The position numbers and the translations under genes were made by a program. From Macrostomum lignano (Eukaryota), in contig NIVC01001804.1 in NCBI GenBank assembly GCA_002269645.1, positions 42,978 to 106,977 on the forward strand: a DNA stretch of 64,000 nt. Direction: 5' to 3'. The number at the start of each line of letters is the position of its first letter. Position 1 is the stretch's first letter. Below are positions 1 through 22,800 of this stretch, piece after piece. A model generated the notes under the pieces. That model saw only the letters and a list, made by a program, of their open reading frames with translations. It ran no database searches and had not been told where the DNA came from.

Positions 1-415
1 AGCTGACTTGGCGTGAAAGCTGGTCAACTTTCTGTGGCACAACACGATACAGGCTGTTTCTCATCCAAACAGGGTTCCTCTGCAAGTGGTCGCTCACATT
101 TGTCATGATAGTACTGAGGTCGAGCTCACGGAAGTTTTTCTCGATGAAATCGCAAACAGTCTGCACGTACAGCGAACCCGTGTTGATGCTTCTAAAGGCG
201 ACTGAGCCTGGACTGTTGGCGTAGCAGACCAGAAAGTCGCTCTCTGGGGTACAGACTGTGAGGTTGTACCTTGTTTCCTCTCGCGAATAGGAAGCAAAAG
301 TTCGATCCTGGCGGCTTCCGCGACCGGCCTGAATGAAGAACACCTTTGGCTTTCCTTCTAGGCTTCGGCAGACAGAGGTCTGTGATGCGATGGTAGTGGC
401 GGTAAAGTCTTCAGC
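1..415 (-). CDS. P1 last exon: caspase C-terminal part, KPKVFFIQAGRG plus small subunit
   Basis: My translation is AEDFTATTIASQTSVCRSLEGKPKVFFIQAGRGSRQD...SDFLVCYANSPGSVAFRSINTGSLYVQTVCDFIEKNF...PQKVDQLSRQVS, with no stop before position 1. It is collinear with 47922-48374. Confidence 0.88.
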
Positions 416-3400
416 CTTTCAATAGTGAATTCCAGTCTAGTCCAGACTTTTGCAAATGCGAGAAACCAATTCTTTTTCAGACAATATTACACTTTGTTTC
501 AATATCATACTCGTACATTTCTATACGGAGCTATTTGAATAACCCTATTATTGCATATATCTAGTAACCATAATAGAAGCTAAGCATGTATTTTTGGCTT
601 ACCTGAAACCTTTCGATCACTTTTCGAATTTCGTAGGGACACCCGTCCCTACCGTAGATGCAGTCGTGGCTGCCGTGCGCCATCAGGAAGCAGACAAAGC
701 TGCCGTGCTTGGCAAGGTCTCGTGACTTTTTAATCTCACTGAGGAAATCATCCAACTGCTCAGTAGTAAGGTCTTTTTTTATCTTGACGATGAAGCGCAG
801 CCTCTCGAATACCCGTTTCGCTTGTTCAACATCATGATCAGAACCCTTACGCTCTGTAATACTGAATGTGATGTCACTTCCGGACTCGTACCTGCTGATG
901 TTGATGATGAGGCAGTAGCCTTGCGGGTCCGTCACTGGATAGAAGTCTCCGTCGAGCCTGGAATGCAGCAGACGCTCAATATACTCGTAATTTTTTATAC
1001 TGACAACAAAAACATAAATTATGTAGTAGCACCTTGGTGGTTGATGTCGAACTATTTTGGCTCGCATAGCTCCGCTGAGGTTTCTAAAAAGTTTTTTTTC
1101 ATTGTCAAAAGGAAATTTATTTGAACTATTCAATGAGTGAATATTTGTTAGCAGTTTTCACTGGACAAATAAAGTAACATCGACTCACAAATCTGCTTCC
1201 TCCGCTTTATCATCTCTTGGTTCTTCCGAATGGTCCGTGACAATTTTTCGCCTAAAATGGTCAAAAAGCTTTGTAGTCTATTAGCTATGCTTTCAGAAGC
1301 TGTGTGTGCTGTAGCTGTGTGCTGTAGCTGTGTGTGCTGTAGCTGTGTGCTGTAGCTGTGTGTGCTGTAGCTGTGTGTGCTGTAGCTGTGTGTGCTGTAG
1401 CTGTGTGCTGTAGCTGTGTGTGCTGTAGCTGTGTGCTGTAGCTGTGTGTGCTGTAGCTGTGTGTGCTGTAGCTGTGTGTGCTGTAGCTGTGTGCTGTAGC
1501 TGTGTGTGCTGTAGCTGTGTGCTGTAGCTGTGTGTGCTGTAGCTGTGTGCTGTAGCTGTGTGTGCTGTAGCTGTGTGCTGTAGCTGTGTGTGCTGTAGCT
1601 GTGTGCTGTAGCTGTGTGTGCTGTAGCTGTGAGCTGTAGCTGTGTGTACTGTAGCTGTGTGTGCTGTAGCTGTGTGTGCTGTAGCTGTGGGTGCTGTAGC
1701 TGTGTGTGCTGTAGCTGTGTGTGCTGTGCTGTAGATGCGTGCTGTAGCTATGTGCTGTAGCTGTGTATGCTGTAGCTGTGTGTCCTGAAGGAACTCACGG
1801 CAGTGCCAGAGGCTCGTTGAAGTAAATCTTGCCTTCGTAACTAAAATTGCAGAGTGGAGTCTGAAGTCAGGGGAATAGAGGATGAGCGCCCTTGCTCCAT
1901 GCTTCACTCTATGTTTTATCGATCTTCATTCTGTTTAACTGTCGAGCTTGCAACTTTCCAATTCTTTACCGTAATAATACAGAAAAGTACTACAAAAACT
2001 GCCCCATTTTACGAGCGTAAGTTAAAACTATTTTTTCACAGCAAAATGCTTGCTGCGCTGAAGTCTCACCATAGACCGTATATTCCATGGGCCACTCACT
2101 ATTAAAACTACTCGTATGTAAAAATTAAACCACTTTAAAGCTCACTTTCAGGGAGGTTAATGACATAGATTTTATTTTCGGGATTTAATCGATCACTTTC
2201 CCGGACATATTGCAAGGATTATTGTATGTACCTAAATAAGCGAGCTTCTCTCTTCTCTTCCTTCGTGACTCGAGAAATTTCTTAATGAAATTTTGTCTAT
2301 GGTAAGAATGTGGGGGCTTCGCCTCTACACCCCCAGCAGGGGCTTCGCCCCCACACCCCAATCCCCAACTTCAACCATAGACATACAAGTACCCCGAAAA
2401 AAGCTGGAAAAATCTTTAGGCCGACCACAGTCGCTGAAAGTTTAAGTTCAGTAGCTGAGGGACATAGAAAGTATTTTTGCAATGGAGAAGAAATATAAAT
2501 TTATTTCAGTTGCACGAAGATACAGAAACTTCACAACCGCTAAAAAGACTGCCGTATATGAAAGTAAGTGAAAAAATTTGACACTTTTCTGTAAAAGCGG
2601 CAAACCTTTTAGGCAGACTTGAATATGCCTCTGCTTCTGCTTCTTGGAAACTCAGAACTTTGTGGTCCTTGACGATGAGTTTTCCGATGACAGCTTGGTT
2701 GCCGAGACAGCAGTTTAGGTCACGCAAGCGCTAATCTTTAATCAAGAACTAACAGAAGCCTTTAGTTGTTGGCACCATGATCTCACGCAGGGCCGTCTGG
2801 AGGTCATTGAACGACTTGCTTCCAGGTTTGTCTGGCGCCGCGCTATCTGCCGATTTTTCGTATAGAGCCGGCGACAGTCGCAGCAGCAAGACTTGAGCTC
2901 GTGCGGCTGGATCCCAGTTGAACAATGCGGCTCCAATCTCAAAGCCAACGATCCAAATTGGCCGTCTCCTCGAGTCTTCCAACCTCAGACATGCCCGACG
3001 TTGGACTCCACTTTGGGTGACGCTCTGGTTATCACTCGGAGTTGCTCGTGACTGGGGGCTGCTTGAAGACACTGCTCCATTGCGGCTTGCAGAAATTGTA
3101 GCCGAATTGGTCCTTGCCTGTGCAAAAGACTTTGTTGGATCCCCTGCTGTCTTGGCTGGCTCCTTGCTCATTGCGTCAGGTTAGAATCGCTGCGACGCCA
3201 ATACTACTACTGAGGCTGTGTTTATTTGAGTTGCAGCTCGCAGCCGATAAACTACGTATATTTCTGCTCAGCCGTAGGCCGTGCTCCAGAGCTTTCTATC
3301 TTAATAAATCTAAATATACTAAATCTCTAATATTTGTTTGTTTGTTTGTTTGTTTGTATGTTTGTCCATAACGCTCTAGAGATTGCAATTCTTCACCGAT

Positions 3401-6400
3401 TTTGATCGCGTTTTCGTCAAAAGATTCGAAATTGTCTAATAATAATAATTGTCTAATATGATTGTGTAAACAATCATAGAAGCGTCATGTAAACAGTCAT
3501 AGAAGCGTCATGGAAGAATAAAAGAAGCGTCATGTAAAAATCAAAAGAAGCGTCATGTCAGACATGAAAGAAGTGTAATGTAAAAATTAAATGAAGCTAT
3601 TGTGCTGTGCTGGGGAGACTTACTGAGATGTCAAGGCTCACGGAGAATAACTGAGATTACGGAGGGGGGTTTCTGAGATGTCAAAGCAAAAGTCAGAAAC
3701 TACTTCAAAGTACATGTACTTTACTCAAATTTTTTATTACATTCTTTGTTGGCTCGCCACGGGGGGGCGCTGATAGAAGAAGAGTCATGTAAAAAAGAAA
3801 AGAAGCACTATGTATACATAAAAGAAGAGTCATGTCGAAGTTAAAAGATTCATTTGGGAATTGCTACGATGTCAAGGCTTGGAGGGAATCGCTATAGTGC
3901 TGTGATTCTTGAAGAAAGAATCACTAAATTGTCAAGGCTTAGGGGAAAAGAATTGCTGAGATTTCAAGGCTTTTATAGGTTGGGTTAAAGTTAGGTTTAG
4001 GTCAGGTTTGGGTTGAGGGTTAGATTTTAGCGGGTTTCAAAGTTAACAGGGGATTTTTCAGATATCGAGGTTTATGGGGGGCATTGCTGACATTTCAAGG
4101 CTTACGGGGGAAATAGCTGAGATGTCAAGGTTCATGGGGGAATAAATGAGATGTCAAGGCTAAAGTCAGAAGCTACATGTAGTCTATTGAAAACTTTTTT
4201 TCATTATTTGTTGGCTCCTCACGGGAGGGAGGGATCGCTGATAGAAAAAGCGTAATGTAAAAAATAAGAAGCTTAATGTCGAAGTTAAGAGATTCATTTG
4301 GGAATCCCTACGATGTCGAGGCTTGCAGGGAATCGCTATAATGCTGTAGTGCTATAATGACTGTTGGAGAGAATTACTGAAATGTCAATGCTTTAGGGTT
4401 AGGGTTAGGGTTAGGGTTAGGGTTAGGGTTAGGGTAAGGTTAGGGTTGGAAGGTTGACAGATTTTTTTTAGATTTCAAGGCTTTTTGGGGGCATTGCTGA
4501 GATGTCAAGGGGGAAGTTGATATGTTAAAGCTTGTGGGGGGGGAATTACTGACATATCAAGGCTTACAAGGGACTTCTGATATATATTGCAAAAAGATTC
4601 TACATGTACTTTATTACAAAGCTTGTACTGCATTTTTGGCTCCCCGACGCTAAGATACTAAGCTAAAAAATACTACTAGCGCTTTACAAACTTATGCAGA
4701 TGTCAGGCTGTAGGGTTAGTGTTCGGGTTGGTATTAGGGTTTAGGTTTAGGGTTAGGTTCAGGGTTATTGCGTTAAGATTCGTGTTAGGGTTAGGGTTAG
4801 AGTAGCTTATAACTTAGCTCATGTAGCTTATTAAAAATGTTTATCATGGAAGCATCATGCAAAAACAATGGAAGCGTCATATAAAAATCATAGAAGCATC
4901 ATGCAACAACCCATGGACAAAATATTGAATTTAGGGTTTTGGTTAGGATTTGGGTTAGTGTTAGAAGTTTGACAGGAGATTTTTTAAGATTTCAAGACTA
5001 CATGTAGCTTATTAAAAAACGCGTATTGCATTTCTTTGGCTCCCCAACGGGGGGCGTAGATTGCTAGTTAGCTTCTAAATTATTATGAGCATAGTAAACT
5101 TCCAACTAAGAAAAATACATTAGCCTGTGTTCTGAATTTTTATGTATGGCCAAGCTACTACAAAAATGTGAAAAATGCCCACTCAGAGCAACTGCAGTCA
5201 GCTGCTCAATATTCAATCATAATTTACAGCACATATAGTTTTCATGCATACATTCTCAGACATTCTCATTCTCAGTCGCCATGAAAACTCACCCACGCAG
5301 CAGCTCAGCCAGTCTCCAGTTTCTCTTTTGTGTGGCCAAGGCTAGCGCAGTCCTATACTTATTGTTCTTCAGGCTCCAATCCGCCCCTGAGTCCAGCAGA
5401 ACCTGACTGACGTGCTGGGGCGCCCAGCAGGTGACTGCCTGTATGAGGGGTGTGTATTCACACTGATTCCTCGCATTGGCGGAGGCTCCGGCAGCCAGCA
5501 GAGCGGAAGCTGCGGCAGAATTGCCATCTTTGACTGCATGATGCAAACAACTGTCAGCAGCAGTATTCGCACAGGTGGGATCACCAAGCTCCACCAGCTG
5601 CTTCCACAGAGCCTCATCACTCCTCCAAGCTTCGTTCATCGCAATATAACCCCGTCTGTCATAAGCATCCATCTCCACCAGCTTCATCCGATCCTCAGCA
5701 TTGAGCTGAGCTACGCCCATCAACGCGGTGAGACCCAAAAAGTCAGGCAGGTCGCAGCTGTCGCGGGTCGCTGCTCGTCGCAGTCCCACCAAGTCGCGCG
5801 CGTTCACCAGCCGCTGCAGCTTCTGTCGATCCGCCTCCTCCTGCAAAGACGAACGGAAACTTTGAGCACAGCTACTCAGCTGCTGCAACATCAGCACCGC
5901 AGATTCCACTCACCTGAGCTGTCAGACCGGAGATAGTGCCATATTCATCCACAACTAGCCGCATCTCCCTGCAACAGCAAAAATGAGCAGCGATGCGAAT
6001 ATGCAATTTTCTAAAATATGACAATTCCGATTGACAAAAAATTTACTTTAATAAGGTCTAGATAATTTTTCATGATAAATTTAGTAAATGGAAATTCCTA
6101 CTTATCTGAGCTGCTTACAGATGGAGTTTCCAAGAGGACTGCAGCAGCTCTGCAACAATCAGCATTGGCGAGAGCGCATCCGACTTCTCACACGCAGCTC
6201 ATTTTCCATTTCTGCAGCATTAGTTTCCTTCCATCTCACAATGTCTCACAAAGCACTCACGCACAGCCTCCCAGTTCTCCATCTGCAGCTCAACCCACAC
6301 ACTCTCACTGCACACCGAGGCCCTACAGCTTCCATTCTTGACTGAGATCAACCGGCACCCCATTGGCTGGGAGGCAGCCAGCTTATCAAGCAGCGAACTG

Positions 6401-7245
6401 CTCACTCACCGCTTGATGTAGCTGGCCAGCTCTGAGTGGCCGCTGAGCCTCGCCAGTGCGGACGCTGTCCAATCTTCGAGATCTTTCAGTCTGAGCAGCC
6501 GCGACCTCTTCGAGTTTCTGTGCTGTCTGCATTCATTGAACCTGTCCTGCCTCAGCAGGTGCAGCAGGTGCTTGGCGCATTTCCAGCTTCCAGTCCGCGC
6601 CGCCTCCATCAGCGGAGTGGCGCCGTTGTCATTCCGCAGCCACTTCGCATCGAACGACAGCAGCGTCAGCAGCCGCAGGTGGTCCCGCCGGGCTGCCAGG
6701 TGCGCAGCCGTGTTGCCGTTCGCGTCAGCTGCCTTGGGGATTGCGCCCAGCTCAAATAAGTACAAGATGCACTTTTCAGTGTGCACGGGAGTCTCAGGAG
6801 CGTCGGCCACCAGCATGAGGACGGTCCGACGATCTGCATCAGCGCTGGTGACCAGCTGGCGCGTTGCCAGCCGCCGCACCTTGCCGAAGTCACCTTGGAT
6901 GACGAGCTTGGCGAGAGTGTGGAGATCGGCTGGTGAGTCTCCGACGCTTTCCCGGTTGCTGGGGTCCGGCTTAGTGAGTTGCTGCAACTGCAATTAAAGC
7001 ATCTCTAACCTAAGTGCAAATCTTAGCACTGAAGTATTTTAGGAGACTTGAATTTACGAGCGTATGAGCTACTGGAGTAGCTGAGAGATGACTAATTTAT
7101 TACTAATTATTAGTTACTAATTACAGATTACTAGTCAATTTCAATAACTTCAACTTACCGCTCTGTCAGAGAACATGGTTATTTTTTCGCTTTCTGACGA
7201 AGTGCTTGACGTGCTCAAAGAGCTTGAACTTGAAGAGCTGGACAT
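1..7245 (-). CDS. P1: ankyrin-ankyrin-pseudocaspase (catalytic Cys to Gly), 8 exons, last exon runs off the window start
   Basis: Manual exon chain: 7245-7159 (87 nt), 6987-6410 (578), 5968-5914 (55), 5840-5293 (548), 1840-1799 (42), 1251-1189 (63), 1083-603 (481), 415-<1. All junctions are AG/GT and the phases match (0,2,0,2,2,2,0). The frame is open throughout (756 codons inside the window). The structure is the same as P3. Confidence 0.78.
603..1083 (-). CDS. P1 exon 7: caspase large subunit (peptidase C14)
   Basis: Contains PQGYCLIINISRY, ERKGSDHDV and SFVCFLMAHG (catalytic His). Donor is CAG|GTAAGC at 603/602; acceptor is TTTTAG|A at 1084/1083. Confidence 0.88.
1293..1785 (+). repeat. 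13/15-bp minisatellite (TG)nCTGTAGC in P1 intron 5
   Basis: Tandem TGTGTGCTGTAGC / TGTGTGTGCTGTAGC units. The same repeat occupies the equivalent intron of P3. Confidence 0.95.
2506..3171 (-). mobile_element. Degenerate LTR-retrotransposon gag-like fragment inside P1 intron 4
   Basis: WIVGFEIGAALFNWDPAARAQVLLLRLSPALYEK...SFNDLQTALREIM resembles retrotransposon gag and is broken by stops. Recognised by eye only. Confidence 0.4.
3309..5067 (+). mobile_element. Non-autonomous Helitron-like element in P1 intron 4
   Basis: The 5' end is A|TCTAAATATACTAAA followed by a TTTG microsatellite. The 3' end is a hairpin (GCTCCCCAACGGGGGGC), then GATTGCTAG|T at 5064-5068. The termini match the family at 21056-35974. 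Confidence 0.65.
4393..4445 (+). repeat. Interstitial telomeric-type (TTAGGG)n tract
   Basis: Seven perfect TTAGGG units (4393-4434), then TAAGG and one more unit. Degenerate units also occur at about 3985-4030 and 4710-4800. Confidence 0.9.
5293..5840 (-). CDS. P1 exon 4: second ankyrin-repeat domain (ANK-A)
   Basis: DSCLHHAVKDGNSAAASALLAAGASANARN and YTPLIQAV motifs. Acceptor CTTTGCAG|GAG; donor GG|GTGAGT, which contains the ORF-track stop. Confidence 0.88.
6410..6987 (-). CDS. P1 exon 2: first ankyrin-repeat domain (ANK-B)
   Basis: NTAAHLAARRDH and GATPLMEAARTG motifs. 578 nt, as in all five copies in the window. Donor CG|GTGAGT. Confidence 0.88.
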
Positions 7246-8862: not shown

Positions 8863-9522
8863 ATGGCGGCAGAGTTCATGGCTTGCAAAGTTTGGTTGCA
8901 GAGTTCATGGCTGAACTGTCTGCATTGGTTGATGAGCCGTTCTGCCTTCTGCCGTTCATCAAGCCTGCAGCTGACCAAGTTGTCCAGTTACTTTGATCGC
9001 TCGACTGGAGAACGACTACAGGATGAAGTGATTTACACTTTATTGTATGTCTTGGGAGAGCGCGGTCAAGAGCACCTCCAACACCTTCGTCAGAGAGACA
9101 TACTCGTAGAAAAAGAAGACGGCGACGGCAAGAAGTATTACGAGCTACCTAACCTCAGAACCAAGAACCAGAGTGCCAATCCAGTCAAGGCCAAAGGTTT
9201 CAACACAAAGCAAGCGAGAATCTATGGCGGTCAGTATGAACTCATTAAGACCTACCTTCAAGTCCTGCCCAACGAAACCAAGGACAATTCGTTTTTTCCA
9301 AGACCGATGGCAAATAAAGAAGGACAGCTGCAGTTTTCAACTAAGCAGGTTCGTGGGATCAATTGGTTAGGATCGTTCATGACTCGATTAAGCACCCTGT
9401 GTGAGCTCAGCAAAAAGTATACGAACCATTGCATTCGAGTAATCCATAGCTACTGGGAAAACACTTGGTACTTGGCAGTTTCTGTTGGGAGCGCGAGGTT
9501 TTCCAGCACGCGGTTCATCACG

Positions 9523-9540
<18 letters not shown>
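8863..9540 (+). mobile_element. Crypton-like tyrosine recombinase fragment (DUF3504/KCTD1-ZMYM-like), truncated
   Basis: GERGQE...TKN...RIY...YELIKTYL...FFPRP...GINWLGSFM...KKYTNHCIR matches the Crypton YR pattern. The final catalytic His/Tyr segment is absent. Confidence 0.6.
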
Positions 9541-9553
<13 letters not shown>

Positions 9554-9700
9554 TGACTGACTGACTGACTGACTGACTGACTGACTGACTGACTGACTGA
9601 CTGACTGACTGACTGACTGACTGACTGACTGACTGACTGACTGACTGACTGACTGACTGACTGACTGACTGACTGACTGACTGACTGACTGACTGACTGA
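9528..9700 (+). repeat. (ACTG)n microsatellite, about 43 units
   Basis: A pure tetranucleotide run at the point where the Crypton fragment and the Mab-21 reading frame converge. Confidence 0.97.
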
Positions 9701-10822
9701 TGGTCGGACCAAAAGCAAAACTTCCACGCCGAGTCGCGGCTGCTCAGATGCCACATCACGAACTCCACAGTCGCTTCAGTCGCCGACTTCTCACGAGACC
9801 AAGCGATGCCTCTGCTTACCGAGTGACCTGAGCACGAGCTCACGACTCTCTCTGCAGTTTCTCGGTCATCAAACTTCAGGCAAGCCAGCGCTCTGAGAGC
9901 CTCCCGTGCTGAGAGGGCGCAGTCTGGCAGTCTGGCAATCAGCTCTGTGAGCGACTCCTGAGATCGCTGGCTGCAGTCACTGCGCGAGAGACGCACCAGA
10001 CACTCTCTCACCACGTCGTAGATCTGATAGTACTCGAGAGCACTGGACTTCGCGAGGGGCATCGGACTCAGATCCGGCAGGATTTGGAACGGGTGGAAGT
10101 AGAATGTGCCTGAGTCGCTCACAGGTCTGAGACTGCCGATGAACTGCTGCAGCAGTTGGGGCAGCCGATCGATTACTGTTCTCAGTGTGCTCATGATGCG
10201 GTCCAAATGCTGGTCCGCTCTCTCCTTAGCCGCACCCTTGAGGTAGATGGCCGCATCGCTGAGAAAGAAATGGTTCATGATGCGACCCCGAGATCGGTCA
10301 GGTGTGTCAGGTGTTTGTCCTGCTCTCGGCTCTTCTCCACACAGTCGAGCAGCATCTGCAGCGACTGTCTCGTGAGACTCACGAGGTTCTCCTTCTTCCA
10401 CTGCTCGACCGGCGTCTCATCCACCATTCGGAAGGTGATGGTCTTCACGTGGTAGGACTTCAAGCCTCGCTGATTGAAGCCATCTTTGTGACAGATGACC
10501 TTCTTGACCAGGTATTTGAGTGTGACGAACAGTTGGCCTTGCAGGGTAGTGAGACTTCGCAGCATCCGGTTCTCCAGGAAGCTGGTGCTCACGCGGAGCT
10601 CTTCGCCTCCTCGGTCAGGAGAGGCTGCGTACACCACGTGACAGGGCGATGAGTCGGAGGTGAGAACCTCCTGGAGAGCCTCCAGCACAGGATGGGGGAT
10701 GTTGGAGATGCGGTTTGGCAGCAGCGGCGCGATGGGCGGGTAGCGGCAGAGACGGCATGCAGAGACATTGTCCAGCGCTGGCTTCAGTGTGCATCCGGGC
10801 GTCGGATAAGCAGGATTTGAGG
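9700..10822 (-). CDS. Mab-21 domain and helical C-terminal region, split across two frames
   Basis: ORF 10275-10901 has CHVV...LRVSTSFLENRMLRSL...LFVTLKYLVKK...LKSYHVKTITFRMVDETPVEQWKKENL. The expected continuation GRIMNHFF lies in ORF 9526-10401, a different frame. Confidence 0.78.
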
Positions 10823-13800
10823 CTGTAAAAACGATTCGGTTCCCGATCGGGAAAAATACAACTTTGAGTCTGTGCAGTGATGCTTTGGACTGAAATACCA
10901 AAACCGCTCAAACAAATGGCACGATATTTGCAGCCACCCTAAACTCACTACGGAGAAGGTCTTTGTTACCTTAAAATTCTTTAAATTCGAGTTCTTCTTA
11001 CCTAAAAGTGCAAAAAAGCTACGAGCTAACTTGCGTAATTTTTAACTGAATCCTCCGTAGCGTTGCTCCACTTTTACCAATGCTACTCAAACATGACACT
11101 TAAAATCTTGCCAAGTTTTCTTAAATTCTTGCCAGAATGGACTAATCCCAGCACACGGAACTCAAGGACATAATTGAACCGTTTGTTGTGAACCTTCTTA
11201 AACAAAAACTTCTACTGTCCATTTGCACTTTTAATATTGAATTATATTTTACCACTCCTCACGTGTTCTTTATTAGTTTTGCTGATGTTTTGCATCCCTA
11301 CACTGCTTAGTTTCTGTAGAACACTTAAACAGTATCATTACTTTTCTCTCGTACGAGTTTGCCACCGCTTCTTATCATTTTACATCAAAGCTACATATTA
11401 ATCCCAACTCCTTGCCTCCGATTATAAAATGCAAATGTATCACCTCTATCCTAACTATTAACAAGCTTTGTTTGAGCATGACTTCAGATTTCAGAATTTC
11501 ATGCTTAAAAAAGATCCAGAGTTAAAAGTCCGCAGGTTGCAACAGCTTGCACATAATAAATGCATGTTGCCAACACAGACCGTCAGGACAGTCAGGCTCT
11601 TGTTTAGATCTGCTTACTGAGCTTAGCTATACTATCGCATACAGAATGTTCTACACCAATGCTTTACACGCTAAAAGCAAACGTCTCTAGCAATCACTAA
11701 CTGAACTATTAGACCATCTCATTCCCAAAGAGAGAACTCACCGAATCCTGAACACTGAATGTGCCCGTTCACCAACTCGTGCTGCTCCGGAGCTCCATCG
11801 CACTCGCACAGGCCTCTCTGGTGGTATTCTCGGCCGGGAGTCAACTCTATCACATCAATATCGGAATTGGCGTCAGTTCTGCCGTTCAGTGTCGTCAAGC
11901 TGTTGCCCCAGCCTTCTGAGTAGCTGCCGACGACAAAGTATGAAGGGTTTCTCAGTCGACTTCTTAGAATCTGCTGCAGGGCATCAGCAGCCGCGCTCTG
12001 CAATGCGGCTCGGGATTCGGTGAAGCCTGACTGCTCCAGTGCCGAGTGAAGCTGCTCGCTCAGCTCTGAGTCGCTGGGACTGCATCTAAAATGTGAGTTG
12101 ATGGTGAAAAACGTGCAGGCGTCTAGAATGGTTAGTTGAATAATTTGTGCTTAAATTTGAATTTTAGCTCGTATTTGACTAGCATAAGGCAGCAGTCTTA
12201 AACAGTGCATGAATTGATATCATGGCAGTTGATCCTTTTAGTCCTTTTAGTTTTAGTATATGAATTTAGTTTTTTTATCGGCCGCAGCAGACTTGTCTGT
12301 GTCTATGACTTAATGTGAGCCGCGCTGTACGTTAAATAAGATTTATATGTAAAGAGGCAAAGCTGGCAAGAAAGCCAAAAGAAAATACAAAGAAACTGTG
12401 GGAGCAAAGACTCTCGAAAGAACCACAACATAACAGTGGCATCGCGAGCAGGATCAACTACAGGCATGAGTAAGCAAGGCGAAAAAATAGTCGGCTCCCC
12501 TACAAAAGCAGGAGCAGGTCCACCGGCTGGCCAGTTGACCAAGGCAGCAGTCTCTGTTGTCAAGACTCCAGTTATTGAAATTTAGAGAAATTTTTTACAT
12601 GTTTTGTTCCTGAAAATTTTCCAATTTCCATAACTCGCTATGCAGTGTCTGTCGTATGGTTAGCACGTAGGAAGTGTTGATAAAACGATGAGGATTTGAG
12701 ACTAGATTTTTGCACTGGAGGTGGGATGGGGCAGGCTGGAGGTGAAGGTCGTGAAATCCACATTCACACTGCATATACTTCTGAGTCACCGATAAACCTT
12801 GTGAGCATTGATATCAGCCATGTCATTCCATATTGACTCAGCATTTTGCAAGCTTTTGCTTTCCACTGCTTGTGTGTTGTTCCAACTTCTAAAACTGCCT
12901 ATCATTACCGCTTGCTTGTACAATTACACAATTTTCTTCGAAGTCGTAAAAACTCGAAAAGGAATAAAAGACGATGAAAAAAACAAATCAAAGGACTGAA
13001 ACTTACCCAAATTGTGACTGTTTTTGTGGCTCTTCCACAGCAACTGTATTTTTAGCCACTTCTTGAAGATTACTGTGCTCAACCTTGGCGTCAGCTTGTG
13101 CTTTGATGAGTGAGCTCACAACTTGGTGGTGACCAATCTGTGATGCAATGTAGAGAGTTGAAACGCCTTGGATTTGTTGAAGATTGACGTAAGCTTGTGC
13201 CTTGATGAGTGAGCTCACAACTTGGTGGTGACCATACTGTGATGCAATGTAGAGAGTTGAAACGCCTTGGATTTGTTGAAGATTGACGTAAGCTTGTGCC
13301 TTGATGAGTGAGCTCACAACTTGGTGGTGACCATACTGTGATGCAATGTAGAGAGTTGAAACGCCTTGGATTTGTTGAAGATCGACGTCAGCTTGTGCTT
13401 TGATGAGTGAGCTTACAACTTGGTGGTGACCATTCTGTGATGCAATTAGGAGAGGTGAGCAGCCATCGCTTCGTTGAAGATTGACGTCAGCTTGTGCTTT
13501 GATGAGTGAGCTCACAACTTGGTGCTGACCTTGCTTTGATGCAATGTAGAGAGGTGACTCGCCAGTGTTTCGTTGAAGATTGACGTCAGCTTGTGCTTTG
13601 ATGAGTGAGATCACTACTTGGTGGTGACCTTTCTGTGATGCAACGTAGAGAGGTGAGCAGCCACTGACTTCTTGAAGATTGACGTCAGCTTGTGCTTTGA
13701 TGAGTGAGCTCACAACTTGGTGGTGACCAAAATGTGATGCAATGTAGAGAGGTGACTCGCCAGTGTTTCGTTGAAGATTGACGTCAGCTTGTGCTTTGAT

Positions 13801-15054
13801 GAGTGAGCTCACAACTTGGTGGTGACCTTGCTGTGATGCAAAGTAGAGAGGTGAGCAGCCATCGCTTCGTTGAAGATTGACGTCAGCTTGTGCTTTGATG
13901 AGTGAGCTCACAACTTGGTGGTGACCATTGTGTGATGCAATTAGGAGAGGTGAAGCGTCTTGGATTTGTTGAAGATTGATGTCAGCTTGTGCTTTGATGA
14001 GTGAGCTCACAACTTGGTGGTGACCTTGCTGTGATGCAATGTAGAGAGGTGAGCAGCCATCGCTCCGTTGAAGATTGACGTCAGCTTGTGCTTTGATGAG
14101 TGAGCTCACAACTTGGTGGTGACCTTGCTGTGATGCAAAGTAGAGAGGTGAGCAGCCATCGCTCCGTTGAAGATTGACGTCAGCTTGTGCTTTGATGAGT
14201 GAGCTCACAACTTGGTGGTGACCATTGTGTGATGCAATTAGGAGAGGTGAAGCGTCTTTGATTTGTTGAAGATTGATGTCAGCTTGTGCTTTGATGAGTG
14301 AGCTCACAACTTGGTGGTGACCTTGCTGTGATGCAATGTAGAGAGGTGAGCAGCCATCGCTCCGTTGAAGATTGACGTCAGCTTGTGCTTTGATGAGTGA
14401 GCTCACAACTTGGTGGTGACCTTGCTGTGATGCAAAGTAGAGAGGTGAGCAGCCATCGCTCCGTTGAAGATTGACGTCAGCTTGTGCTTTGATGAGTGAG
14501 CTTACAACTTGGTGGTGACCTTGCTGTGATGCAAAGTAGAGAGGTGAGCAGCCATCGCTCCGTTGAAGATTGACGTCAGCTTGTGCTTTGATGAGTGAGC
14601 TCACAACTTGGTGGTGACCCATCAGTGATGCAATGTAGAGAGGTGAAGCGCCTTTGATTTGTTGAAGATTGACGTCAGCTTGTGCTTTGATGAGTGCGCT
14701 CACAACTTGGTGGTGACCATTTTGTGATGCAATGTAGAGGGGTGAATAGCCATCGGCTTCTTGAAGATTGACGTCAGCTCGGGCTTGAATGAACATTTCA
14801 ACAATTTTGTCTTTTCCCATTGCACACGCAAAGTGAAGCGGCGAGAATGTCATCTCATTGATTCTGAAGAGCCTATCAACGTTAGAAGGAATCTGCAGGT
14901 ATCGTGAAATTTTTGTTTCATTTTCGAACATAACGGCTTCCAGGATCTCCTGCTGATCAGTACCATCAAGGCCCTCGCTTTGGCCTGCGGACCTGCCGAA
15001 GGTCTGCTTCAGAACTGCTGCAATCGCTGTCAAGATTCTCCAAAGAGCTTCCAT
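9700..15054 (-). CDS. Ankyrin-repeat / Mab-21 (cGAS-like receptor type) nucleotidyltransferase fusion, with one frameshift near 10310
   Basis: Exons: 15054-13007 (donor GG|GTAAGT, phase 2), optional 12888-12790 (99 nt, phase 2-2), 12085-11742 (phase 2-1), 10822 to about 9700 (phase 1 acceptor TTTTTACAG|CC). Motifs: GSYSEG...SDIDV, ELRVSTSFLE, LKYLVK, LKSYHVKT, MNHFF. Confidence 0.72.
11742..12085 (-). CDS. Nucleotidyltransferase catalytic exon (GS...DxD)
   Basis: CSPSDSELSEQLHSALEQSGFTESRAALQSAAADALQQIL...YFVVGSYSEGWGN...NSDIDVIEL. Acceptor ATTTTAG|A; donor G|GTGAGT. Confidence 0.82.
13007..15054 (-). CDS. Single large exon encoding 18 ankyrin repeats (17 near-identical 99-bp units)
   Basis: Units of xxxxxSPLY(I/F)ASxxGHHQVVSSLIKAQADVNLQ. 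A 98-aa N-terminal part, 17 x 33 aa and a 24-aa tail add up to the 683-aa ORF. Confidence 0.95.
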
Positions 15055-15265: not shown

Positions 15266-15322
15266 CTGTCTGTCTGTCTGTGTGTCTGACTTAGTGTCCG
15301 TCTTAGTGTCTGTCTGTCTATA

Positions 15323-15395
<73 letters not shown>

Positions 15396-15432
15396 GGCTG
15401 TCTGTCTGTATATCTGTCTCTCTGTCTGTCTG
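15266..15432 (+). repeat. (TCTG)n microsatellite upstream of the ANK-Mab-21 start
   Basis: Imperfect TCTG run. Confidence 0.9.
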
Positions 15433-15489
15433 TCTATAATGCTATACACAGGCACACACTCATACAGATGCTCACACAGGGTGTACAGC

Positions 15490-18400
15490 GGCCATGACTT
15501 TATATTCGTCAGAAATGCACACTATCCAGCATTCATGGCTGTTCGATAGCAGCAGATCTAGGAAGGAAGATATAGAAGCGGCAGACAGAGGAGGGTGGAA
15601 GGTCTAGAAGCGGCAGACAGAGGAGGGTGGAAGGTCTAGAAGCGGCAGGCAGAGGAGGGTGGAAGGTCTAGAAGCGGCAGACAGAGGAGGGTGGAAGTTC
15701 TAGAAGCGGCAGATAGAGGAGGATGGGAGGTCTAGAAGCGGCAGGCAGAGGAGGGTGGAAGTTCTAGAAGCGGCAGGCAGAGGAGGGCGGAAGTTCTAGA
15801 AGCGGCAGGCAGAGGAGGGCGGAAGTTCTAGAAGCGGCAGGCAGAGGAGGGCGGAAGGTCTAGAAGCGGCAGGCAGAGGAGGGTTGTAGGTCTAGAAGCG
15901 GCAGGCAGAGGAGAGGGTTGTAGGTCTAGAAGCGGCAGACAGAGGAGGGTGGAAGGTCTAGAAGCGGCAGGCAGAGGAGGGTGGTAGGTCTAGAAGCGGC
16001 AGACAGAGGAGGGTGGAAGGTCTAGAAGCGGCAGGCAGAGGAGGGTTGTAGGTCTAGAAGCGGCAGACAGAGGAGGGTGGTAGGTCTAGAAGCGGCAGGC
16101 AGAGGAGGGTTGTAGGTCTAGAAGCGGCAGACAGAGGAGGGTGGTAGGTCTAGAAGCGGCAGACAGAGGAGGGTGGAAGGTCTAGAAGCGGCAGGCAGAG
16201 GAGGGTGGTAGGTCTAGAAGCGGCAGACAGAGGAGTAGCTGGGGATAAAGTATCCATTGGAAAAATAACCCCAACCCCCCTCCCTCAAGATCGATACCAG
16301 TGTCTTGGAAGGCGCAATATTTTTAAAGCTCCGAGAGTGGGTCTGGCCGACTGGATAGAATAGAAGGACCTCCTAGTTTGCATTCCAGTAGTTTTTGCTG
16401 CAGCAGAGATACAGGACTTGCCCCCAAGGAGTTGGCAGGCGGAATGTTGTACAGTTGTGCTTTAATCTTCTTTCTGTGCTCATCCGGCTGTCTGCTCACC
16501 ATCAGCAGCCTGTTCAGCGATCGCTGGATGCTGGTTGAAGTGGCTCTGAAGGAGACGGACTACTAGCACACACCCTAACAATTCCTATACAGTAGCAGAA
16601 CAAACCTCCAGCTGACATTTTTATGTATAAAGTGGATTCAGGTTTCAAGCTTACAGCCGATCTGAACACGGTATACTGTATACGATTTCTTATCTGACTT
16701 CTACCAGTAAGCAGTTGAGGTTGCTTGCTCTGTATTTCTGAATTAAATGCCTGAATATTTTATTTGCCAACATGTTGAGACACGTAGAATCAATGCTTAA
16801 CCATGCATTATGAATTAATAAGCAACGTACATGTGAGCTGCCTTTTGATAGTGAAGTGCGAGCTTTGCCAAATACCGTAAAATTAGGCCTTGGGCACTGC
16901 AGTGTCAGTAGTTATTAATCAAATCATTAATCGAATCTGTACCATGTCGTTCACAGCATCTGAGAATGAACCGGGGAGGCAGTTAACATAAACTTGTCTT
17001 AGGCTGTGGAGTATTTACTTTCATGCTGTCTACTTTGAGTACAGCGCAAAGTAGATTAGCAGATTATTTCTACTTTTATTTTCTTACTTCCTTTTTGCGT
17101 TTTTATTCAACAATACGCTCTTGTTTGATTTCCTAAATGTCTTTGCTTTCATTAGAGTTTTATACTTGAGTAACGTCGGAACGAGAATGAATTCAGACAA
17201 TAAATGAAACAATACTACAGCCACAGTACTGTTACCTGCAAAAACCTGCTAAGGCAAGTTGGTCATCTATCTATCTTCCATCCGGAATGCTCCCATACTC
17301 AAGTCCGCCTTTCTATCTGTTTCATAGAAAGTCTCGTCCCACATTTGGCTCATGGAAGTCTGTTTTGTCAGGCAGTTCTATAGTTCTATGTCAGGCATAT
17401 AAAGGCCATGACTTTATATTCGTCAGAAATGCACACTATCCAGCATTCATGGCTGTTCGATAGCAGCAGATCTAGGAAGGAAGATATAGAAGCGGCAGAC
17501 AGAGGAGGGTGGAAGGTCTAGAAGCGGCAGGCAGAGGAGGGTGGAAGGTCTAGAAGCGGCAGACAGAGGAGGGTGGAAGTTCTAGAAGCGGCAGATAGAG
17601 GAGGATGGGAGGTCTAGAAGCGGCAGGCAGAGGAGGGTGGAAGTTCTAGAAGCGGCAGGCAGAGGAGGGCGGAAGTTCTAGAAGCGGCAGGCAGAGGAGG
17701 GCGGAAGTTCTAGAAGCGGCAGGCAGAGGAGGGCGGAAGGTCTAGAAGCGGCAGGCAGAGGAGGGTTGTAGGTCTAGAAGCGGCAGGCAGAGGAGAGGGT
17801 TGTAGGTCTAGAAGCGGCAGACAGAGGAGGGTGGAAGGTCTAGAAGCGGCAGGCAGAGGAGGGTGGTAGGTCTAGAAGCGGCAGACAGAGGAGGGTGGAA
17901 GGTCTAGAAGCGGCAGGCAGAGGAGGGTTGTAGGTCTAGAAGCGGCAGACAGAGGAGGGTGGTAGGTCTAGAAGCGGCAGGCAGAGGAGGGTTGTAGGTC
18001 TAGAAGCGGCAGACAGAGGAGGGTGGTAGGTCTAGAAGCGGCAGACAGAGGAGGGTGGAAGGTCTAGAAGCGGCAGGCAGAGGAGGGTGGTAGGTCTAGA
18101 AGCGGCAGACAGAGGAGTAGCTGGGGATAAAGTATCCATTGGAAAAATAACCCCAACCCCCCTCCCTCAAGATCGATACCAGTGTCTTGGAAGGCGCAAT
18201 ATTTTTAAAGCTCCGAGAGTGGGTCTGGCCGACTGGATAGAATAGAAGGACCTCCTAGTTTGCATTCCAGTAGTTTTTGCTGCAGCAGAGATACAGGACT
18301 TGCCCCCAAGGAGTTGGCAGGCGGAATGTTGTACAGTTGTGCTTTAATCTTCTTTCTGTGCTCATCCGGCTGTCTGCTCACCATCAGCAGCCTGTTCAGC

Positions 18401-19839: not shown

Positions 19840-22800
19840 CTAGTCGAAGAACTTCTTGTCTTCGTACCTGAAAAAAGAAGTGCAGAGTATAAACTCAGAG
19901 TGTGGATTTCAAATTGCAGAGTGTAAACTCGGAGTGTGGATTTCAAATTGCAGAGTATAAACTCAGAGTGTGGATTTCAAATTGCAGAGTATAAACTCAG
20001 AGTGTGGATTTCAAATTGCAGAGTGTAAACTCAGAGTGTGGATTTCAAATTGCAGAGTGTAAACTCGGAGTGTGGATTTCAAATTGCAGAGTATAAACTC
20101 AGAGTGTGGATTTCAAATTGCAGAGTATAAACTCAGAGTGTGGATTTCAAATTGCAGAGTGTAAACTCAGAGTGTGGATTTCAAATTGCACTATAGTTCT
20201 TACTGCCCATTTATACTACAAAAATTAAAAAATTCCACTCAGAGCAACTGCAGTCAGCTGCTCAAAATTCAATGATGAGCAATAATGCTTTTCAGCGATT
20301 TCGAGCATAGGTCAGAGAGATATTCTCAGTTGCCATGGAAACTCACCCACGCAGCAGCTCAGCCAGCTCGCTGTTTTCCGTCTGTGTGGCCAAATCCAGC
20401 GCAGTCATGCCGTCTCTGTCCTTCAGGCTCCAATCCGCCCCTGAGTCCAGCAGAACCCGACCGACTGCGGCGGTGGTGGCGGGGGGCGCAAAGATGGCTG
20501 CCAGCATGAGGGGAGTCAATTCACAGTATCCTCGATCGTTCCTGGCGTTGGCGGAGGCTCCGGCAGCCAGCAGAGCGGAGGCTGCGGCAGAATTGCCACC
20601 GAAGCCTGCCCAGTGCAGGCAACTATCAGACCTTGAATCCACACAGGTGGGGTCACCCAGCTGCACCAGCTGCTTCCACAGAGCCTCATCACTACACGAG
20701 CTGTTCAGAGCTGCCCACATCAACGCGTTGAGACCACATCTGTCAGGCAGATCGCAGCTGCCGCGGGTCGCCGCTCGCCGCAGCCCCGCCAAGTCACCCG
20801 CCTCGGCCAGCCGCTGCAGTTCCTTTCGATCCGCTTCCTCCTGCAAAGGTGAGCGGGAAATTTGAGCACAGCTGCTCAGCTGCAGCCGCATCGGCACCGC
20901 AGATGCCGCTCACCTGGACTGTCAGGCCGGATAATGAGGCATTTTTTCCCACAACCAGCCGCATCTCCCTGTAACAGTAAAAATGAGCAGCGAATTCGCA
21001 ATTTTCCATATCAGACAACTACGACTGCCAAAATAAAATTTAATTTAGTACGATACTAGAAATCTTCGCCCCCCGATGGGGGGCATCTAGATAGAATCTC
21101 TGGCTCTCTACAAGTATCAAAAAGACGGCCAAATAAAGACTTCACATAGACAATAGAAAAACTGCTCAAATGAAGTGCAATGCAAAAAGAAAACATCCCA
21201 GGACAGCAAGCACCACCAGATAGCAAGCATCTCCAGATAGCAAGCACCCCCCGATAACAACAACAACAACAACAGAGTACGCTGCCAGTTCACAAAAGCA
21301 GCGTCAGAGGGCGCGCTTCAAAGCTTGGGCGCGAACAAAAGCCGCACCGCCGGCAGAGTCCGGGGCGCCGGCGTCAGCCAGCAGACAGTCGACGTAGCGC
21401 CGAGTCCTCGCCTGTCCCCGCCGGTAGGGTGCCTGCAACGTAAGTAGCAGCACCTCCTGCACCGGCTCCGGACAGTTGGCCTCGGCGCGGATGACGTGGC
21501 CTGCCAGCTGGAGTCGCCGACGGCGCAGCAGATCGCTAGGACGGGCCAGGCCGGCGCGATGATAGAGCGCCGTGTTGGTGACTCGCTCGTTGCCGATCTT
21601 GAAGGCGGCGCGCAGCAGGCCAGCGTGCGCCGCGTCGACTTGAGCCTCGAGCGAGTCTGTCAGCGTCCAGGTCTCGGCGTTGTATAACAGGACGGTCTCG
21701 ATCACCGCCTGGAACAGCGCCGCCCTCTGGCGGTCCGGTAGGGCCTCGGACTGCAGGACTGACCTTATAGAACGAAAGGCAGCCCAAGCAAGTCCTCGGC
21801 GACGCCGCAGATCCTCGCGGACGTCGGGAACCAGACCGCCGAGGTAGACGAACTGCTGACATCTTGGAAGCTCACTCGCCTGTCCGTCAGCGCCTCGGCA
21901 GAAGATTGCAGCCTCGGTGTCGTCCGGCACGCATAGCACGACGGTCTTCTGCGTGTTGACCACCAGGCCGACGCTCGCCGCAACGGCAACCAGCCTATCC
22001 AGCTGTCGTTGGGCGCCCTCGACGGTCGAGGACAGCAGGGCGAGGTCATCGGCGTAGCCAAGCACGCTGAGCCGTCTCTCCGGTTGGCGTCGACCCACGC
22101 GTCGCCGCAGCAGGAAGCCGTCGTCGTTGGAAGGCAGAGCAGTCCGTAGCACCCAGTCAAGCACCAGAATAAATAGGAACGGCGCTAGCGTATCTCCCTG
22201 GAGCACCCCGGAGGATGTCTCGAAGAAATCCGATAGGCCGTCCGGTGTTGAGACAGCAGCCGTCGTGCCGTGGTACAGCGCCATGACAGCAGAAATCAGC
22301 AGCTCTGGCACGTTGTACGCACGGAGCACCTCTGGGAGCGCGTCCCTCACGACCGAGTCGAAAGCCTTCCTGAAATCGACGAAGATCAGGATCAGGGTCA
22401 ACTGGCGGATGCGCGCCTCCTCGATGACTCGTCGAAGAGCCAGGATCTGCGTCACTGTGCCGCGATGGGGCCGGAATCCGTTCTGCTCAGGTCGCAGGTA
22501 CGGGTCCAGCACAGGCTGTAACCGCGATAGCAGCATGCGGTTGAACAGCTTCGCGGCGCAGGACTGTAGGCAGATGCCTCGATGCTCCTCGAGCTTGGTG
22601 GTGCCCGGCTTCTTTGGAATGGCGACGATGTGCGCCGTGGTCCATTCGTTTGGCGCCACCTCACCGAAAAGCACGCGGTTCATCACTCTGGCGACCTCAG
22701 TGGCCACGCAGTGGATCCGCAGCGCCTCGGTGGGCACCTCGTCCGGACCAAGCGCTTTGCCGCCCGGCGTCTGCCGAGCGAACTTCACAACGTCGGCTGT

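What the first reader, a model, noticed from the sequence alone, without database searches (positions are those of the whole stretch)
9700..15054. 18-ankyrin-repeat sensor spliced to a cGAS-like (Mab-21) nucleotidyltransferase
Seen: the 683-aa ankyrin ORF ends in GG|GTAAGT (phase 2), in frame with the exon at 12085 carrying GSYSEG...SDIDV. That exon splices (phase 1) to an exon with a candidate third acidic residue (LDNV) and Mab-21 motifs. Established: cGAS-like receptors of this fold make cyclic dinucleotides on sensing a ligand. Inference: a receptor in which a variable ankyrin array, rather than a nucleic-acid-binding surface, may gate second-messenger synthesis.
Basis: partly seen in the sequence, partly recalled or inferred. 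Interest (0 to 1): 0.85.

Follow-up and report, generated by a model that had tools for sequence, protein, structure and literature searches.

The report
Broken flatworm ankyrin–cGAS-like receptor gene
It belongs to a large Macrostomum (flatworm) family that is already listed in the published cGAS-like receptor catalogue, and this copy is frameshifted and has lost its 3' end.

Summary
On the minus strand, an intact 683-aa ORF (15054..13007) encodes 18 ankyrin repeats. It ends in GG|GTAAGT and is in frame with exon 12085..11742, which carries GS and DID. That exon joins exon 10822.., which carries the third Asp and the Mab-21 C-lobe.

An RNA-seq-derived Macrostomum lignano gene model for an intact paralog has the same three exons, intron positions and phases. 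Another annotated protein carries the same junction (…FG|CSPSDSEL…). The enzyme fold is supported:
- Profile-profile match to Mab-21 proteins: 99.7%.
- AlphaFold model of an 88%-identical paralog: pLDDT 94.7, with cGAS, MAB21L1 and MB21D2 as the best PDB matches.
- The GS/DxD/D catalytic set is complete in 45 of 51 relatives.

Two things lower the claim. First, this copy is damaged. A 4-nt deletion at 10317|10316 gives a stop at 10277-10275. Homology then ends at 9701 in a (TCAG)n run, so the conserved last ~110 residues are missing. Second, the architecture is not new. Li et al. 2023 list ankyrin–cGLR fusions, including M. lignano ones, and screened five of them; none is marked active.

That the ankyrin array gates messenger synthesis remains an untested inference. 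Verdict: probable pseudogene member of a known but uncharacterised family. Interest 0.3.

The parts
13007..15054 (-). Exon 1. It starts at the ATG at 15054, which is homologous to the annotated start of paralog P0164 (MESLCSS...). It encodes a 66-aa N-terminal segment, 18 ankyrin repeats and a short linker, and ends GG|GTAAGT (phase 2).
   Evidence: ORF and Pfam Ank_2 E 1e-126; repeat table; start and exon end match P0164.
13085..14786 (-). 99-nt tandem array inside exon 1. Repeats 5=8, 6=9 and 16=17 are identical at DNA level, which indicates recent block duplication. Amino-acid variation is concentrated at repeat positions 1-4, 8-9, 12-13 and 33.
   Evidence: TRF period 99, 17.2 copies, 89% matches; pairwise repeat identities and column variability.
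12086..13006 (-). Intron 1 (phase 2). It contains an open 99-nt candidate cassette exon at 12888..12790 that no relative supports.
   Evidence: Sequence; conserved intron position and phase in L002; cassette scan and blastp.
11742..12085 (-). Exon 2. It encodes the N-terminal helices and the start of the NTase core: the GS motif (codons 11928..11923) and Asp-Ile-Asp (11862..11854). It ends TTCG|GTGAGT (phase 1).
   Evidence: aligned to GS and SDxD of Mab-21 proteins by hhalign; column conservation.
10823..11741 (-). Intron 2 (phase 1). About 560 nt (11124..11683) have no counterpart in the paralog locus L001.
   Evidence: blastn of the window against L001; intron position conserved in L002.
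9701..10822 (-). Exon 3 (damaged). It encodes the third catalytic Asp (codon 10772..10770, KPALDNV), the Mab-21 C-lobe (SYHVKT...W...HFF) and part of the family-specific C-terminal domain, up to ...SAWKFCF.
   Evidence: Pfam Mab-21_C; cGAS match by profile; hhalign.
10275..10317 (-). Lesion 1. A 4-nt (GACA) deletion between 10317 and 10316, relative to the paralog, lies in otherwise identical flanks. It shifts the frame and gives a stop TGA at 10277..10275, before the HFF motif.
   Evidence: DNA alignment with L001; the homologs read EQDRQTPDTPDRSRGRIMNHFF across this point.
9523..9700 (.). Lesion 2. A (TCAG)n microsatellite of 44.5 copies starts exactly where homology to the paralogs ends. 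The last ~110 codons (EFDQRP...NFDALL...) are not found anywhere in the window.
   Evidence: TRF; blastn and alignment with L001; tblastn with C-termini of 10 relatives.
8863..9540 (+). A 225-aa ORF on the opposite strand that abuts the microsatellite. It resembles the Crypton/DUF3504 tyrosine-recombinase-related domain (...KKYTNHCIR...). That resemblance is from memory only, because Pfam gave no hit. It may be part of whatever replaced the 3' end of the gene.
   Evidence: ORF list; Pfam negative; no match in L001 or L002.

Best explanation
The locus is a decayed paralog of the lineage-specific ankyrin-cGLR family of the flatworm Macrostomum.

Intact family members are about 1100-aa proteins made from three exons. 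They consist of an N-terminal ankyrin solenoid of variable length, a short linker, a cGAS/Mab-21-type nucleotidyltransferase with a complete GS / DxD / D active site, and a conserved ~250-aa C-terminal domain with no recognisable relatives.

The most likely working of the intact proteins is inferred, not shown. The ankyrin array binds a protein or other non-nucleic-acid ligand, or holds the enzyme in an off state. That event switches on synthesis of a nucleotide second messenger, which is read by an as yet unknown receptor.

The copy in this window keeps an intact ankyrin exon and all catalytic codons. However, a 4-nt deletion truncates the Mab-21 C-lobe, and the last ~110 codons have been replaced by a microsatellite and foreign sequence. 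As assembled it cannot make a full-length enzyme, and it is best read as a pseudogene in a gene-duplication-rich, transposon-rich region.
For: Organism and family:
- All close hits are M. lignano proteins. The best is 88% identical.
- The profile search finds 82 representatives at 50% clustering with E<1e-30. Many are 1100-1400 aa with the domain at about residue 500 onward.
- All 8 that were scanned carry N-terminal ankyrin arrays.

Gene structure:
- P0164 has the same 3 exons and phases.
- P0012 has the same junction peptide.
- The GenBank models are RNA-seq-derived (PMC5730564).

Fold:
- PDB profile hit to cGAS, E 1e-5.
- hhalign against bona fide Mab-21 proteins gives 99.7%, E 1.6e-26, over 302 columns, with GS, SDxD and D.V.A aligned.
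- AF2 pLDDT 94.7 and pTM 0.94.
- Foldseek top hits are cGAS, MAB21L1, MB21D2 and CdnE.

Active site:
- Complete in 45 of 51 relatives and in the window.

Decay of this copy:
- 4-nt deletion.
- Missing C-terminus.
- dN/dS against the closest paralog is 0.52 upstream and 1.08 downstream of the frameshift.
- No identical protein is on record.

Context:
- A retroelement RT ORF, duplicated ankyrin-caspase genes and exon fragments lie in the same window.

Non-nucleic-acid ligand (weak evidence):
- The core pI is 6.6 against 8.95 for the mouse cGAS catalytic domain.
- Ankyrin variation sits at positions 1-4, 8-9 and 12-13.
Against: - Both lesions could be assembly errors. The deletion lies in a GACAGACA repeat, and the truncation lies at a long microsatellite where mis-joins are common.
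- The ankyrin exon is a perfect 683-codon ORF, which is unexpected for an old pseudogene. Any decay must therefore be recent.
- The downstream dN/dS rests on only 18 differences.
- There is no expression data for this locus.
- For the family mechanism there is no biochemical activity for any member. Whether Macrostomum has STING or another receptor was not determined.
Confidence: 0.65

Rival explanations
1. The gene is intact and functional in the animal. On this reading the 4-nt deletion and the break at the (TCAG)n run are assembly or consensus errors. The locus would then encode a full-length ankyrin-cGLR receptor.
For: - The 683-codon ankyrin ORF is intact, and all splice sites and catalytic codons are intact.
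- The flanks of the deletion are 100% identical to the paralog, and the deletion removes one unit of a short tandem GACA repeat.
- The truncation coincides exactly with a 178-nt microsatellite.
- The published M. lignano assembly is described as highly repetitive and redundant.
Against: - There are two independent lesions in one exon.
- The missing C-terminal coding sequence is nowhere in the 64-kb window.
- The sequence beyond the microsatellite is unrelated to either paralog locus.
- dN/dS is about 1 after the frameshift (small sample).
Confidence: 0.2
2. The locus is expressed as a shortened product. This would be either a stand-alone 683-aa ankyrin protein (intron 1 retained, stop in GTAAGT) or a 979-aa ankyrin plus truncated-NTase protein. 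Such a product would act as a decoy or regulator of intact family members rather than as an enzyme.
For: - The ankyrin ORF is intact with very recent repeat duplications.
- The premature stop lies in the last exon, so by general knowledge nonsense-mediated decay would not be expected.
- A paralog model (P0023) joins the same N-terminal peptide MEALWRILTAIAAVL directly to the NTase without the array. This shows that module usage varies in the family.
Against:
- In the family representatives and annotated proteins examined, the ankyrin array is followed by the NTase domain wherever the model is not cut short.
Confidence: 0.1
3. The family is not enzymatic. On this reading it would be like MAB21L1 or MiD49/51, with the Mab-21 fold serving as a scaffold or nucleotide-binding adaptor and the ankyrin array simply mediating protein interactions.
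For: - Five M. lignano relatives were in the published screen and none is annotated as active.
- MAB21L1 and MiD49 are among the structural matches.
- 6 of 51 relatives have lost a catalytic residue.
Against: - GS, both DxD aspartates and the third Asp are kept in 45 of 51 divergent relatives, which argues for selection on catalysis.
- The screen used nucleic-acid ligands and constructs without the ankyrin array, so a negative result is expected if the ligand is something else.
Confidence: 0.15

Closest known systems
M. lignano ANK-cGLR proteins catalogued by Li et al. 2023 (for example PAA86972.1 / BOX15_Mlig012742g2, PAA45980.1, PAA68676.1)
   Same: - Same species group and same architecture. 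Ank_2 domains are listed for these proteins in Table S2.
- Same extended motif GS.[AS][ED][GA]W[GA]...[DN]G...[SA]D[IV]D.
- 38% identity with E 3e-76 over the whole NTase plus C-terminal region.
   Different: - This is a different paralog, with at most 88% identity to any protein on record.
- It carries a frameshift and a 3' truncation.
- Its ankyrin array is made of nearly identical 99-nt units.
BOX15_Mlig016300g1 (P0164, 1148 aa), an intact annotated paralog
   Same: - Same start peptide, a long ankyrin array of comparable length, and the same three exons with identical intron positions and phases.
- Same catalytic motifs and C-terminal domain.
   Different: - About 65% identical to the family reference P0001 in the NTase part; its identity to the window was not measured directly.
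- Its reading frame is complete to the stop, whereas the window copy's frame is broken.
cGAS and animal cGLRs (human and mouse cGAS, Drosophila cGLR1, MB21D2)
   Same: - NTase core plus helical C-lobe, with the best structural matches to this group.
- GS / [DE]h[DE] / [DE] active-site pattern within the spacing used to define cGLRs.
- The SYHxKT...W...[HN][YF]F C-lobe signature is shared.
   Different: - Only 12-17% identity.
- 20 residues lie between GS and DxD, the upper limit of the motif, because of an inserted WGNSL..L[DN]G loop.
- V replaces [QT] before GS.
- No cGAS zinc thumb was recognised. Instead there is a family-specific conserved H/C/C/H set between the DxD and the third Asp.
- The core is near-neutral rather than basic.
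- It has an N-terminal ankyrin array and an extra ~250-aa C-terminal domain.
[quoted passage not shown] 2023, Fig. 4C)
   Same: A cGLR core fused to a repeat or interaction module that is proposed to bind ligands or partners.
   Different: - They come from a different phylum and were not compared at sequence level here.
- No biochemical data exist for either fusion type.

Membership tests
cGAS-like receptor (cGLR), criteria of Li et al. 2023 | Active-site motif h[QT]GS [X8-20] [DE]h[DE]h [X50-90] h[DE]h | tested here: met
   The window reads VVGS - 20 residues - DIDV - 52 residues - LDN (motif quoted). One deviation: V replaces [QT], as in the M. lignano entries that the authors themselves accepted. 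The catalytic positions are complete in 45 of 51 relatives.
cGAS-like receptor (cGLR), criteria of Li et al. 2023 | [quoted passage not shown] | tested here: met
   hhalign of the family profile against Mab-21 proteins gives 99.7%, E 1.6e-26, over 302 columns from the first helix to beyond HFF. cGAS is hit by profile at E 1e-5. Caveat: in this window the helix bundle is interrupted by the frameshift.
cGAS-like receptor (cGLR), criteria of Li et al. 2023 | Predicted structural homology to known cGLR/CD-NTase enzymes | tested here: met
   AF2 model of paralog P0001 (88% identical to the window) has pLDDT 94.7. Foldseek top hits are cGAS, MAB21L1, MB21D2 and bacterial CdnE, with probability 1.00 and TM about 0.5-0.58 on the target. 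The test was done on the paralog, not on the window's own sequence.
cGAS-like receptor (cGLR) | Ligand-dependent synthesis of a nucleotide second messenger | not testable with these tools
   This needs biochemistry. Five M. lignano relatives were screened with nucleic-acid ligands and none is annotated as active.
Pfam Mab-21 (PF03281 NTase domain, PF20266 C-domain) | Score above the gathering threshold | tested here: inconclusive
   PF20266 scores 24.9 bits on the exon-3 ORF and 23.8 bits on the frame-repaired protein, against a cut-off of 24.1. PF03281 gives no hit. The family is too divergent for these models.
Ankyrin-repeat protein | Tandem 33-residue ANK repeats | tested here: met
   Ank_2 E 1e-126 and Ank E 3e-116 with 17 stretches; 18 repeats in register.
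Intact protein-coding gene | Uninterrupted reading frame covering all conserved domains of the family | tested here: not met
   A 4-nt deletion gives a stop at 10277-10275. The last ~110 conserved residues are absent from the window.
cGAS-STING-type pathway | A cognate second-messenger receptor (STING or other) in the same genome | not tested
   No suitable search was available. The literature reports loss of cGAS and STING in Schistosoma and planarians. Macrostomum is not covered by those surveys or by Table S5 of Li et al..

The most novel reading that the evidence does not exclude
The Macrostomum ankyrin-cGLR family may be a clade of protein-sensing (not nucleic-acid-sensing) cGLRs. In this reading, a rapidly duplicating ankyrin array supplies ligand specificity. 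A previously undescribed ~250-aa C-terminal domain and a family-specific H/C/C/H site take part in activation or output. The product signals through a receptor other than canonical STING, in a phylum otherwise reported to have lost cGAS-STING. The physical clustering with ankyrin-caspase genes would then reflect a modular 'ankyrin sensor + effector' immune repertoire.
Probability: 0.2. Interest if true: 0.7.

Novelty: new member of a known kind. Interest (0 to 1): 0.3.

Why it matters
If the family is what it looks like, it would be a natural case of a cGAS-type enzyme controlled by a protein-recognition module instead of a nucleic-acid-binding surface. Flatworms have otherwise been reported to have lost cGAS and STING. 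That would widen the range of ligands known for cGLRs and raise the question of what reads the signal there.

For this particular locus the value is smaller. It documents one more, probably dead, copy. It also shows how fast the family turns over, through block duplication of ankyrin units, slippage frameshifts and transposon-rich surroundings. The architecture itself is already in the published catalogue, so the finding is not a discovery of a new kind.

Tried and rejected
- Pfam alone is not enough here. PF03281 is silent and PF20266 is borderline.
- The first AF2 run, with 9 sequences, was useless: pLDDT 53, with the NTase core below 50. Only the 80-sequence alignment gave a reliable model.
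- The exact-sequence look-up of the 683-aa ankyrin ORF found nothing. So no contig or transcript of this very locus was obtained.
- I searched the window for the missing C-terminal exon with the C-termini of 10 relatives at E up to 50. Nothing was found beyond the six residues AWKFCF.
- I looked for a paralog inside the window and found none.
- The paralog locus L001 has no ankyrin exon within 10 kb upstream, so it could not be used to compare exon 1.
- The sequence beyond the microsatellite (7000-9540) matches neither paralog locus. Within the window it has only weak matches near 52.7-53.0 kb.
- The C-terminal ~250-aa domain has no significant match in PDB sequences (best E 0.45) or Pfam (best E 0.013, each family hit by only one or two members). 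My idea that its last five helices might be a death-fold domain is therefore unsupported, and I dropped it.
- I did not search for STING in Macrostomum. The word-index search would probably miss a divergent flatworm STING, so a negative result would mean nothing. One protein search was left unused for that reason.

Full report
**What is in the sequence**

The window is eukaryotic. On the minus strand an ATG at 15054 opens a 683-codon ORF that Pfam reads as ankyrin repeats (Ank_2 E 1e-126). Cut in register, it holds a 66-residue N-terminal segment, one divergent first repeat, 16 very similar 33-residue repeats and a last repeat that runs into a linker, 18 in all. Tandem Repeats Finder reports the same array as 17.2 copies of a 99-nt unit at 13085..14786.

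The ORF's stop codon is the TAA inside GG|GTAAGT, so a donor at 13007 leaves the frame open in phase 2. The acceptor ...TTTAG|A at 12085 continues that frame through ...FVVGSYSEGWGNSLTTLNGRTDANSDIDV... to a second donor, TTCG|GTGAGT at 11742 (phase 1). The acceptor ...TTACAG|CC at 10822 then continues into ...ASNPAYPTPGCTLKPALDNVSACRLCRYPP... and the SYHVKT...W... signature of the Mab-21 C-lobe.

**Is the splicing real?**

I could not obtain reads or transcripts for this locus. The evidence therefore comes from relatives.

- A protein search with the NTase part returned only Macrostomum lignano proteins, the best 88% identical.
- One of them, P0012, reads ...AVELPPKQLDFG|CSPSDSELSHQLHSALEQSGF.... 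This is the same junction as the window's ...AVEEPQKQSQFG|CSPSDSELSEQLHSALEQSGF....
- The complete paralog P0164 (BOX15_Mlig016300g1, 1148 aa) starts with the homologous peptide. On its genomic locus it has exactly three exons, with a phase-2 intron after the ankyrin exon and a phase-1 intron at ...GF|AS....
- The GenBank models of that assembly were derived from a genome-guided RNA-seq transcriptome (PMC5730564).
- In a profile search of 1.8 billion representatives, 82 clusters match below 1e-30. Many are 1100-1400 aa with the domain starting near residue 500. All eight that I scanned have N-terminal ankyrin arrays.

The ankyrin-NTase fusion is therefore the normal state of this family.

**Is it a cGAS-like enzyme?**

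Pfam is nearly blind here. Mab-21_C scores 24.9 bits against a cut-off of 24.1, and the Mab-21 NTase model gives nothing.

- A profile of nine family members hits mouse and human cGAS in the PDB at E 1e-5.
- The distant hits of the profile search are bona fide Mab-21 proteins carrying PF03281 and PF20266.
- A profile-profile comparison with 18 of them gives 99.7% probability, E 1.6e-26, over 302 columns. GS, SDxD and the D.V.A strand are aligned residue for residue.
- With an 80-sequence alignment, AlphaFold2 models the 88%-identical paralog P0001 at pLDDT 94.7 and pTM 0.94.
- Foldseek then ranks cGAS, MAB21L1, MB21D2 and bacterial CdnE first.

The window meets the published cGLR active-site pattern: VVGS, 20 residues, DIDV, 52 residues, LDN. 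The only deviation is V where [QT] is usual. The five catalytic positions are complete in 45 of 51 relatives that cover them, which argues for selection on catalysis.

The family has several features of its own:
- an inserted WGNSL..L(D/N)G loop between GS and DxD;
- a conserved His/Cys/Cys/His set between the DxD and the third Asp that the distant Mab-21 proteins lack, possibly a metal site (inference);
- a near-neutral core, pI 6.6 against 8.95 for the mouse cGAS catalytic domain;
- a conserved, confidently folded ~250-residue C-terminal domain with no match in Pfam or PDB sequences.

**This copy is damaged**

Aligned to the paralog locus L001 (91% DNA identity), the window lacks four bases. 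The paralog reads GAGCAGGACAGACAAACACC where the window reads GAGCAGGAC----AAACACC. The gap lies between 10317 and 10316, inside flanks that are otherwise identical. The homologs read ...EKSREQDRQTPDTPDRSRGRIMNHFFL... across this point. The window's frame instead runs into TGA at 10277-10275, before the HFF motif that closes the C-lobe.

Independently, homology to every relative ends at 9701, after ...SAWKFCF, where a 178-nt (TCAG)n run begins. In the paralog the remaining ~110 codons follow in the same exon. In the window they are nowhere to be found. The sequence beyond the microsatellite is unrelated and carries an opposite-strand ORF that looks transposon-derived.

The dN/dS ratio against P0001 is 0.52 before the frameshift and 1.08 after it, the latter on only 18 differences. 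The surrounding 64 kb holds a reverse-transcriptase ORF and duplicated gene fragments.

I read this as a recently decayed paralog (confidence about 0.65). The intact 683-codon ankyrin ORF, the repeat context of the deletion and the microsatellite at the break leave assembly error as a real alternative (about 0.2).

**How it probably works**

Shown: the architecture, the fold and the conservation of the catalytic set.

Inferred: in intact members the ankyrin solenoid recognises a ligand or partner, and this controls synthesis of a nucleotide messenger. The indirect support is thin:
- The length of the segment N-terminal to the NTase varies widely between paralogs.
- This array contains identical 99-nt units and a duplicated three-repeat block.
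- Amino-acid variation is concentrated at repeat positions 1-4, 8-9, 12-13 and 33. From general knowledge of ankyrin repeats, these form the usual binding face.
- The enzyme core is not basic.

Whether Macrostomum has STING or another receptor was not determined. cGAS and STING are reported as lost in Schistosoma and in planarians.

**Comparison with what is known**

The architecture is not new. Li et al. 2023 (PMC9980059) state that some cGLRs carry ankyrin or TPR modules. Their Table S2 lists Ank_2 domains on M. lignano cGLRs (PAA86972.1, PAA45980.1, PAA68676.1 and others).

Five M. lignano members (samples 89-93) were purified without the ankyrin array and screened with nucleic-acid ligands. 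None carries the note that marks the 15 active enzymes. The window's NTase is 38% identical to sample 89 over its full length (E 3e-76).

The locus is therefore a further, probably dead, member of a catalogued but functionally uncharacterised clade.

**Verdict**

- Observation: confirmed.
- Interpretation: partly supported.
- Novelty: new member of a known kind.
- Interest: 0.3.

Noticed in passing
window 47925..52559 (-) and 2..6975 (-): Two paralogous ankyrin-caspase genes lie on the same strand as the target gene. Each has two ankyrin exons followed by a caspase p20 exon (Peptidase_C14, E 1e-19 and 2e-18; ...AHGS...) and a p10 exon (...QACRGS...). The first copy runs off the window start. 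They flank the ankyrin-cGLR locus, so this is a cluster of 'ankyrin + effector' genes.
   Followed up: partly
window 36429..37013, 39222..39806, 42014..42598 (-); also 20346..20897 (-): Three identical copies of the first ankyrin exon of the caspase gene lie about 2.79 kb apart, each 91% identical to the exon at 51966..52559. There is also a stray copy of the second ankyrin exon (76% identical). These are tandem segmental duplications or exon fragments.
   Followed up: partly
window 21304..23724 (-): An 806-aa ORF with a reverse-transcriptase domain (RVT_1, E 6e-29) sits in a GC-rich block (0.56-0.62 GC at 20-24 kb). It is a retroelement.
   Followed up: no
window 8863..9540 (+): A 225-aa ORF abuts the (TCAG)n run that truncates the gene. 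Its ...KKYTNHCIR... region recalls the DUF3504/Crypton tyrosine-recombinase-related domain. That is from memory only; Pfam found nothing.
   Followed up: partly
window 15266..15435 and 15565..16000+: A (CTGT)n microsatellite of 42.5 copies and a 32-nt tandem repeat of at least 13.6 copies lie immediately upstream of the gene's start codon.
   Followed up: no
window 11124..11683 (intron 2): About 560 nt in intron 2 have no counterpart in the paralog locus L001. This may be an insertion.
   Followed up: no
family proteins, P0001 residues ~340-591; window 9701..~10150: A conserved ~250-residue C-terminal domain (FHPF.ILP, LPDCA.SARE.L.AL..LKF, DSAWKFCF, NFDALL) is modelled with high confidence. 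It has no relatives in Pfam or in PDB sequences.
   Followed up: partly
family proteins, P0001 H84/C89/C91/H104; window exon 2 (YHQRGLCECDG...NGH): A His/Cys/Cys/His set is conserved in about 90% of family members but not in distant Mab-21 proteins. It may be a zinc site, at a different place from the cGAS zinc thumb.
   Followed up: partly
P0023 (UniProt A0A1I8IKY0), residues ~577-615: In this annotated paralog the start peptide MEALWRILTAIAAVL is joined almost directly to the NTase, without an ankyrin array. It could be an ankyrin-less isoform or gene, or a faulty gene model.
   Followed up: no
window exon 3 vs L001: Synonymous divergence from the paralog drops from 0.115 (first 274 codons) to 0.028 (last 204 codons). 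This suggests a mosaic history, such as gene conversion between paralogs.
   Followed up: no
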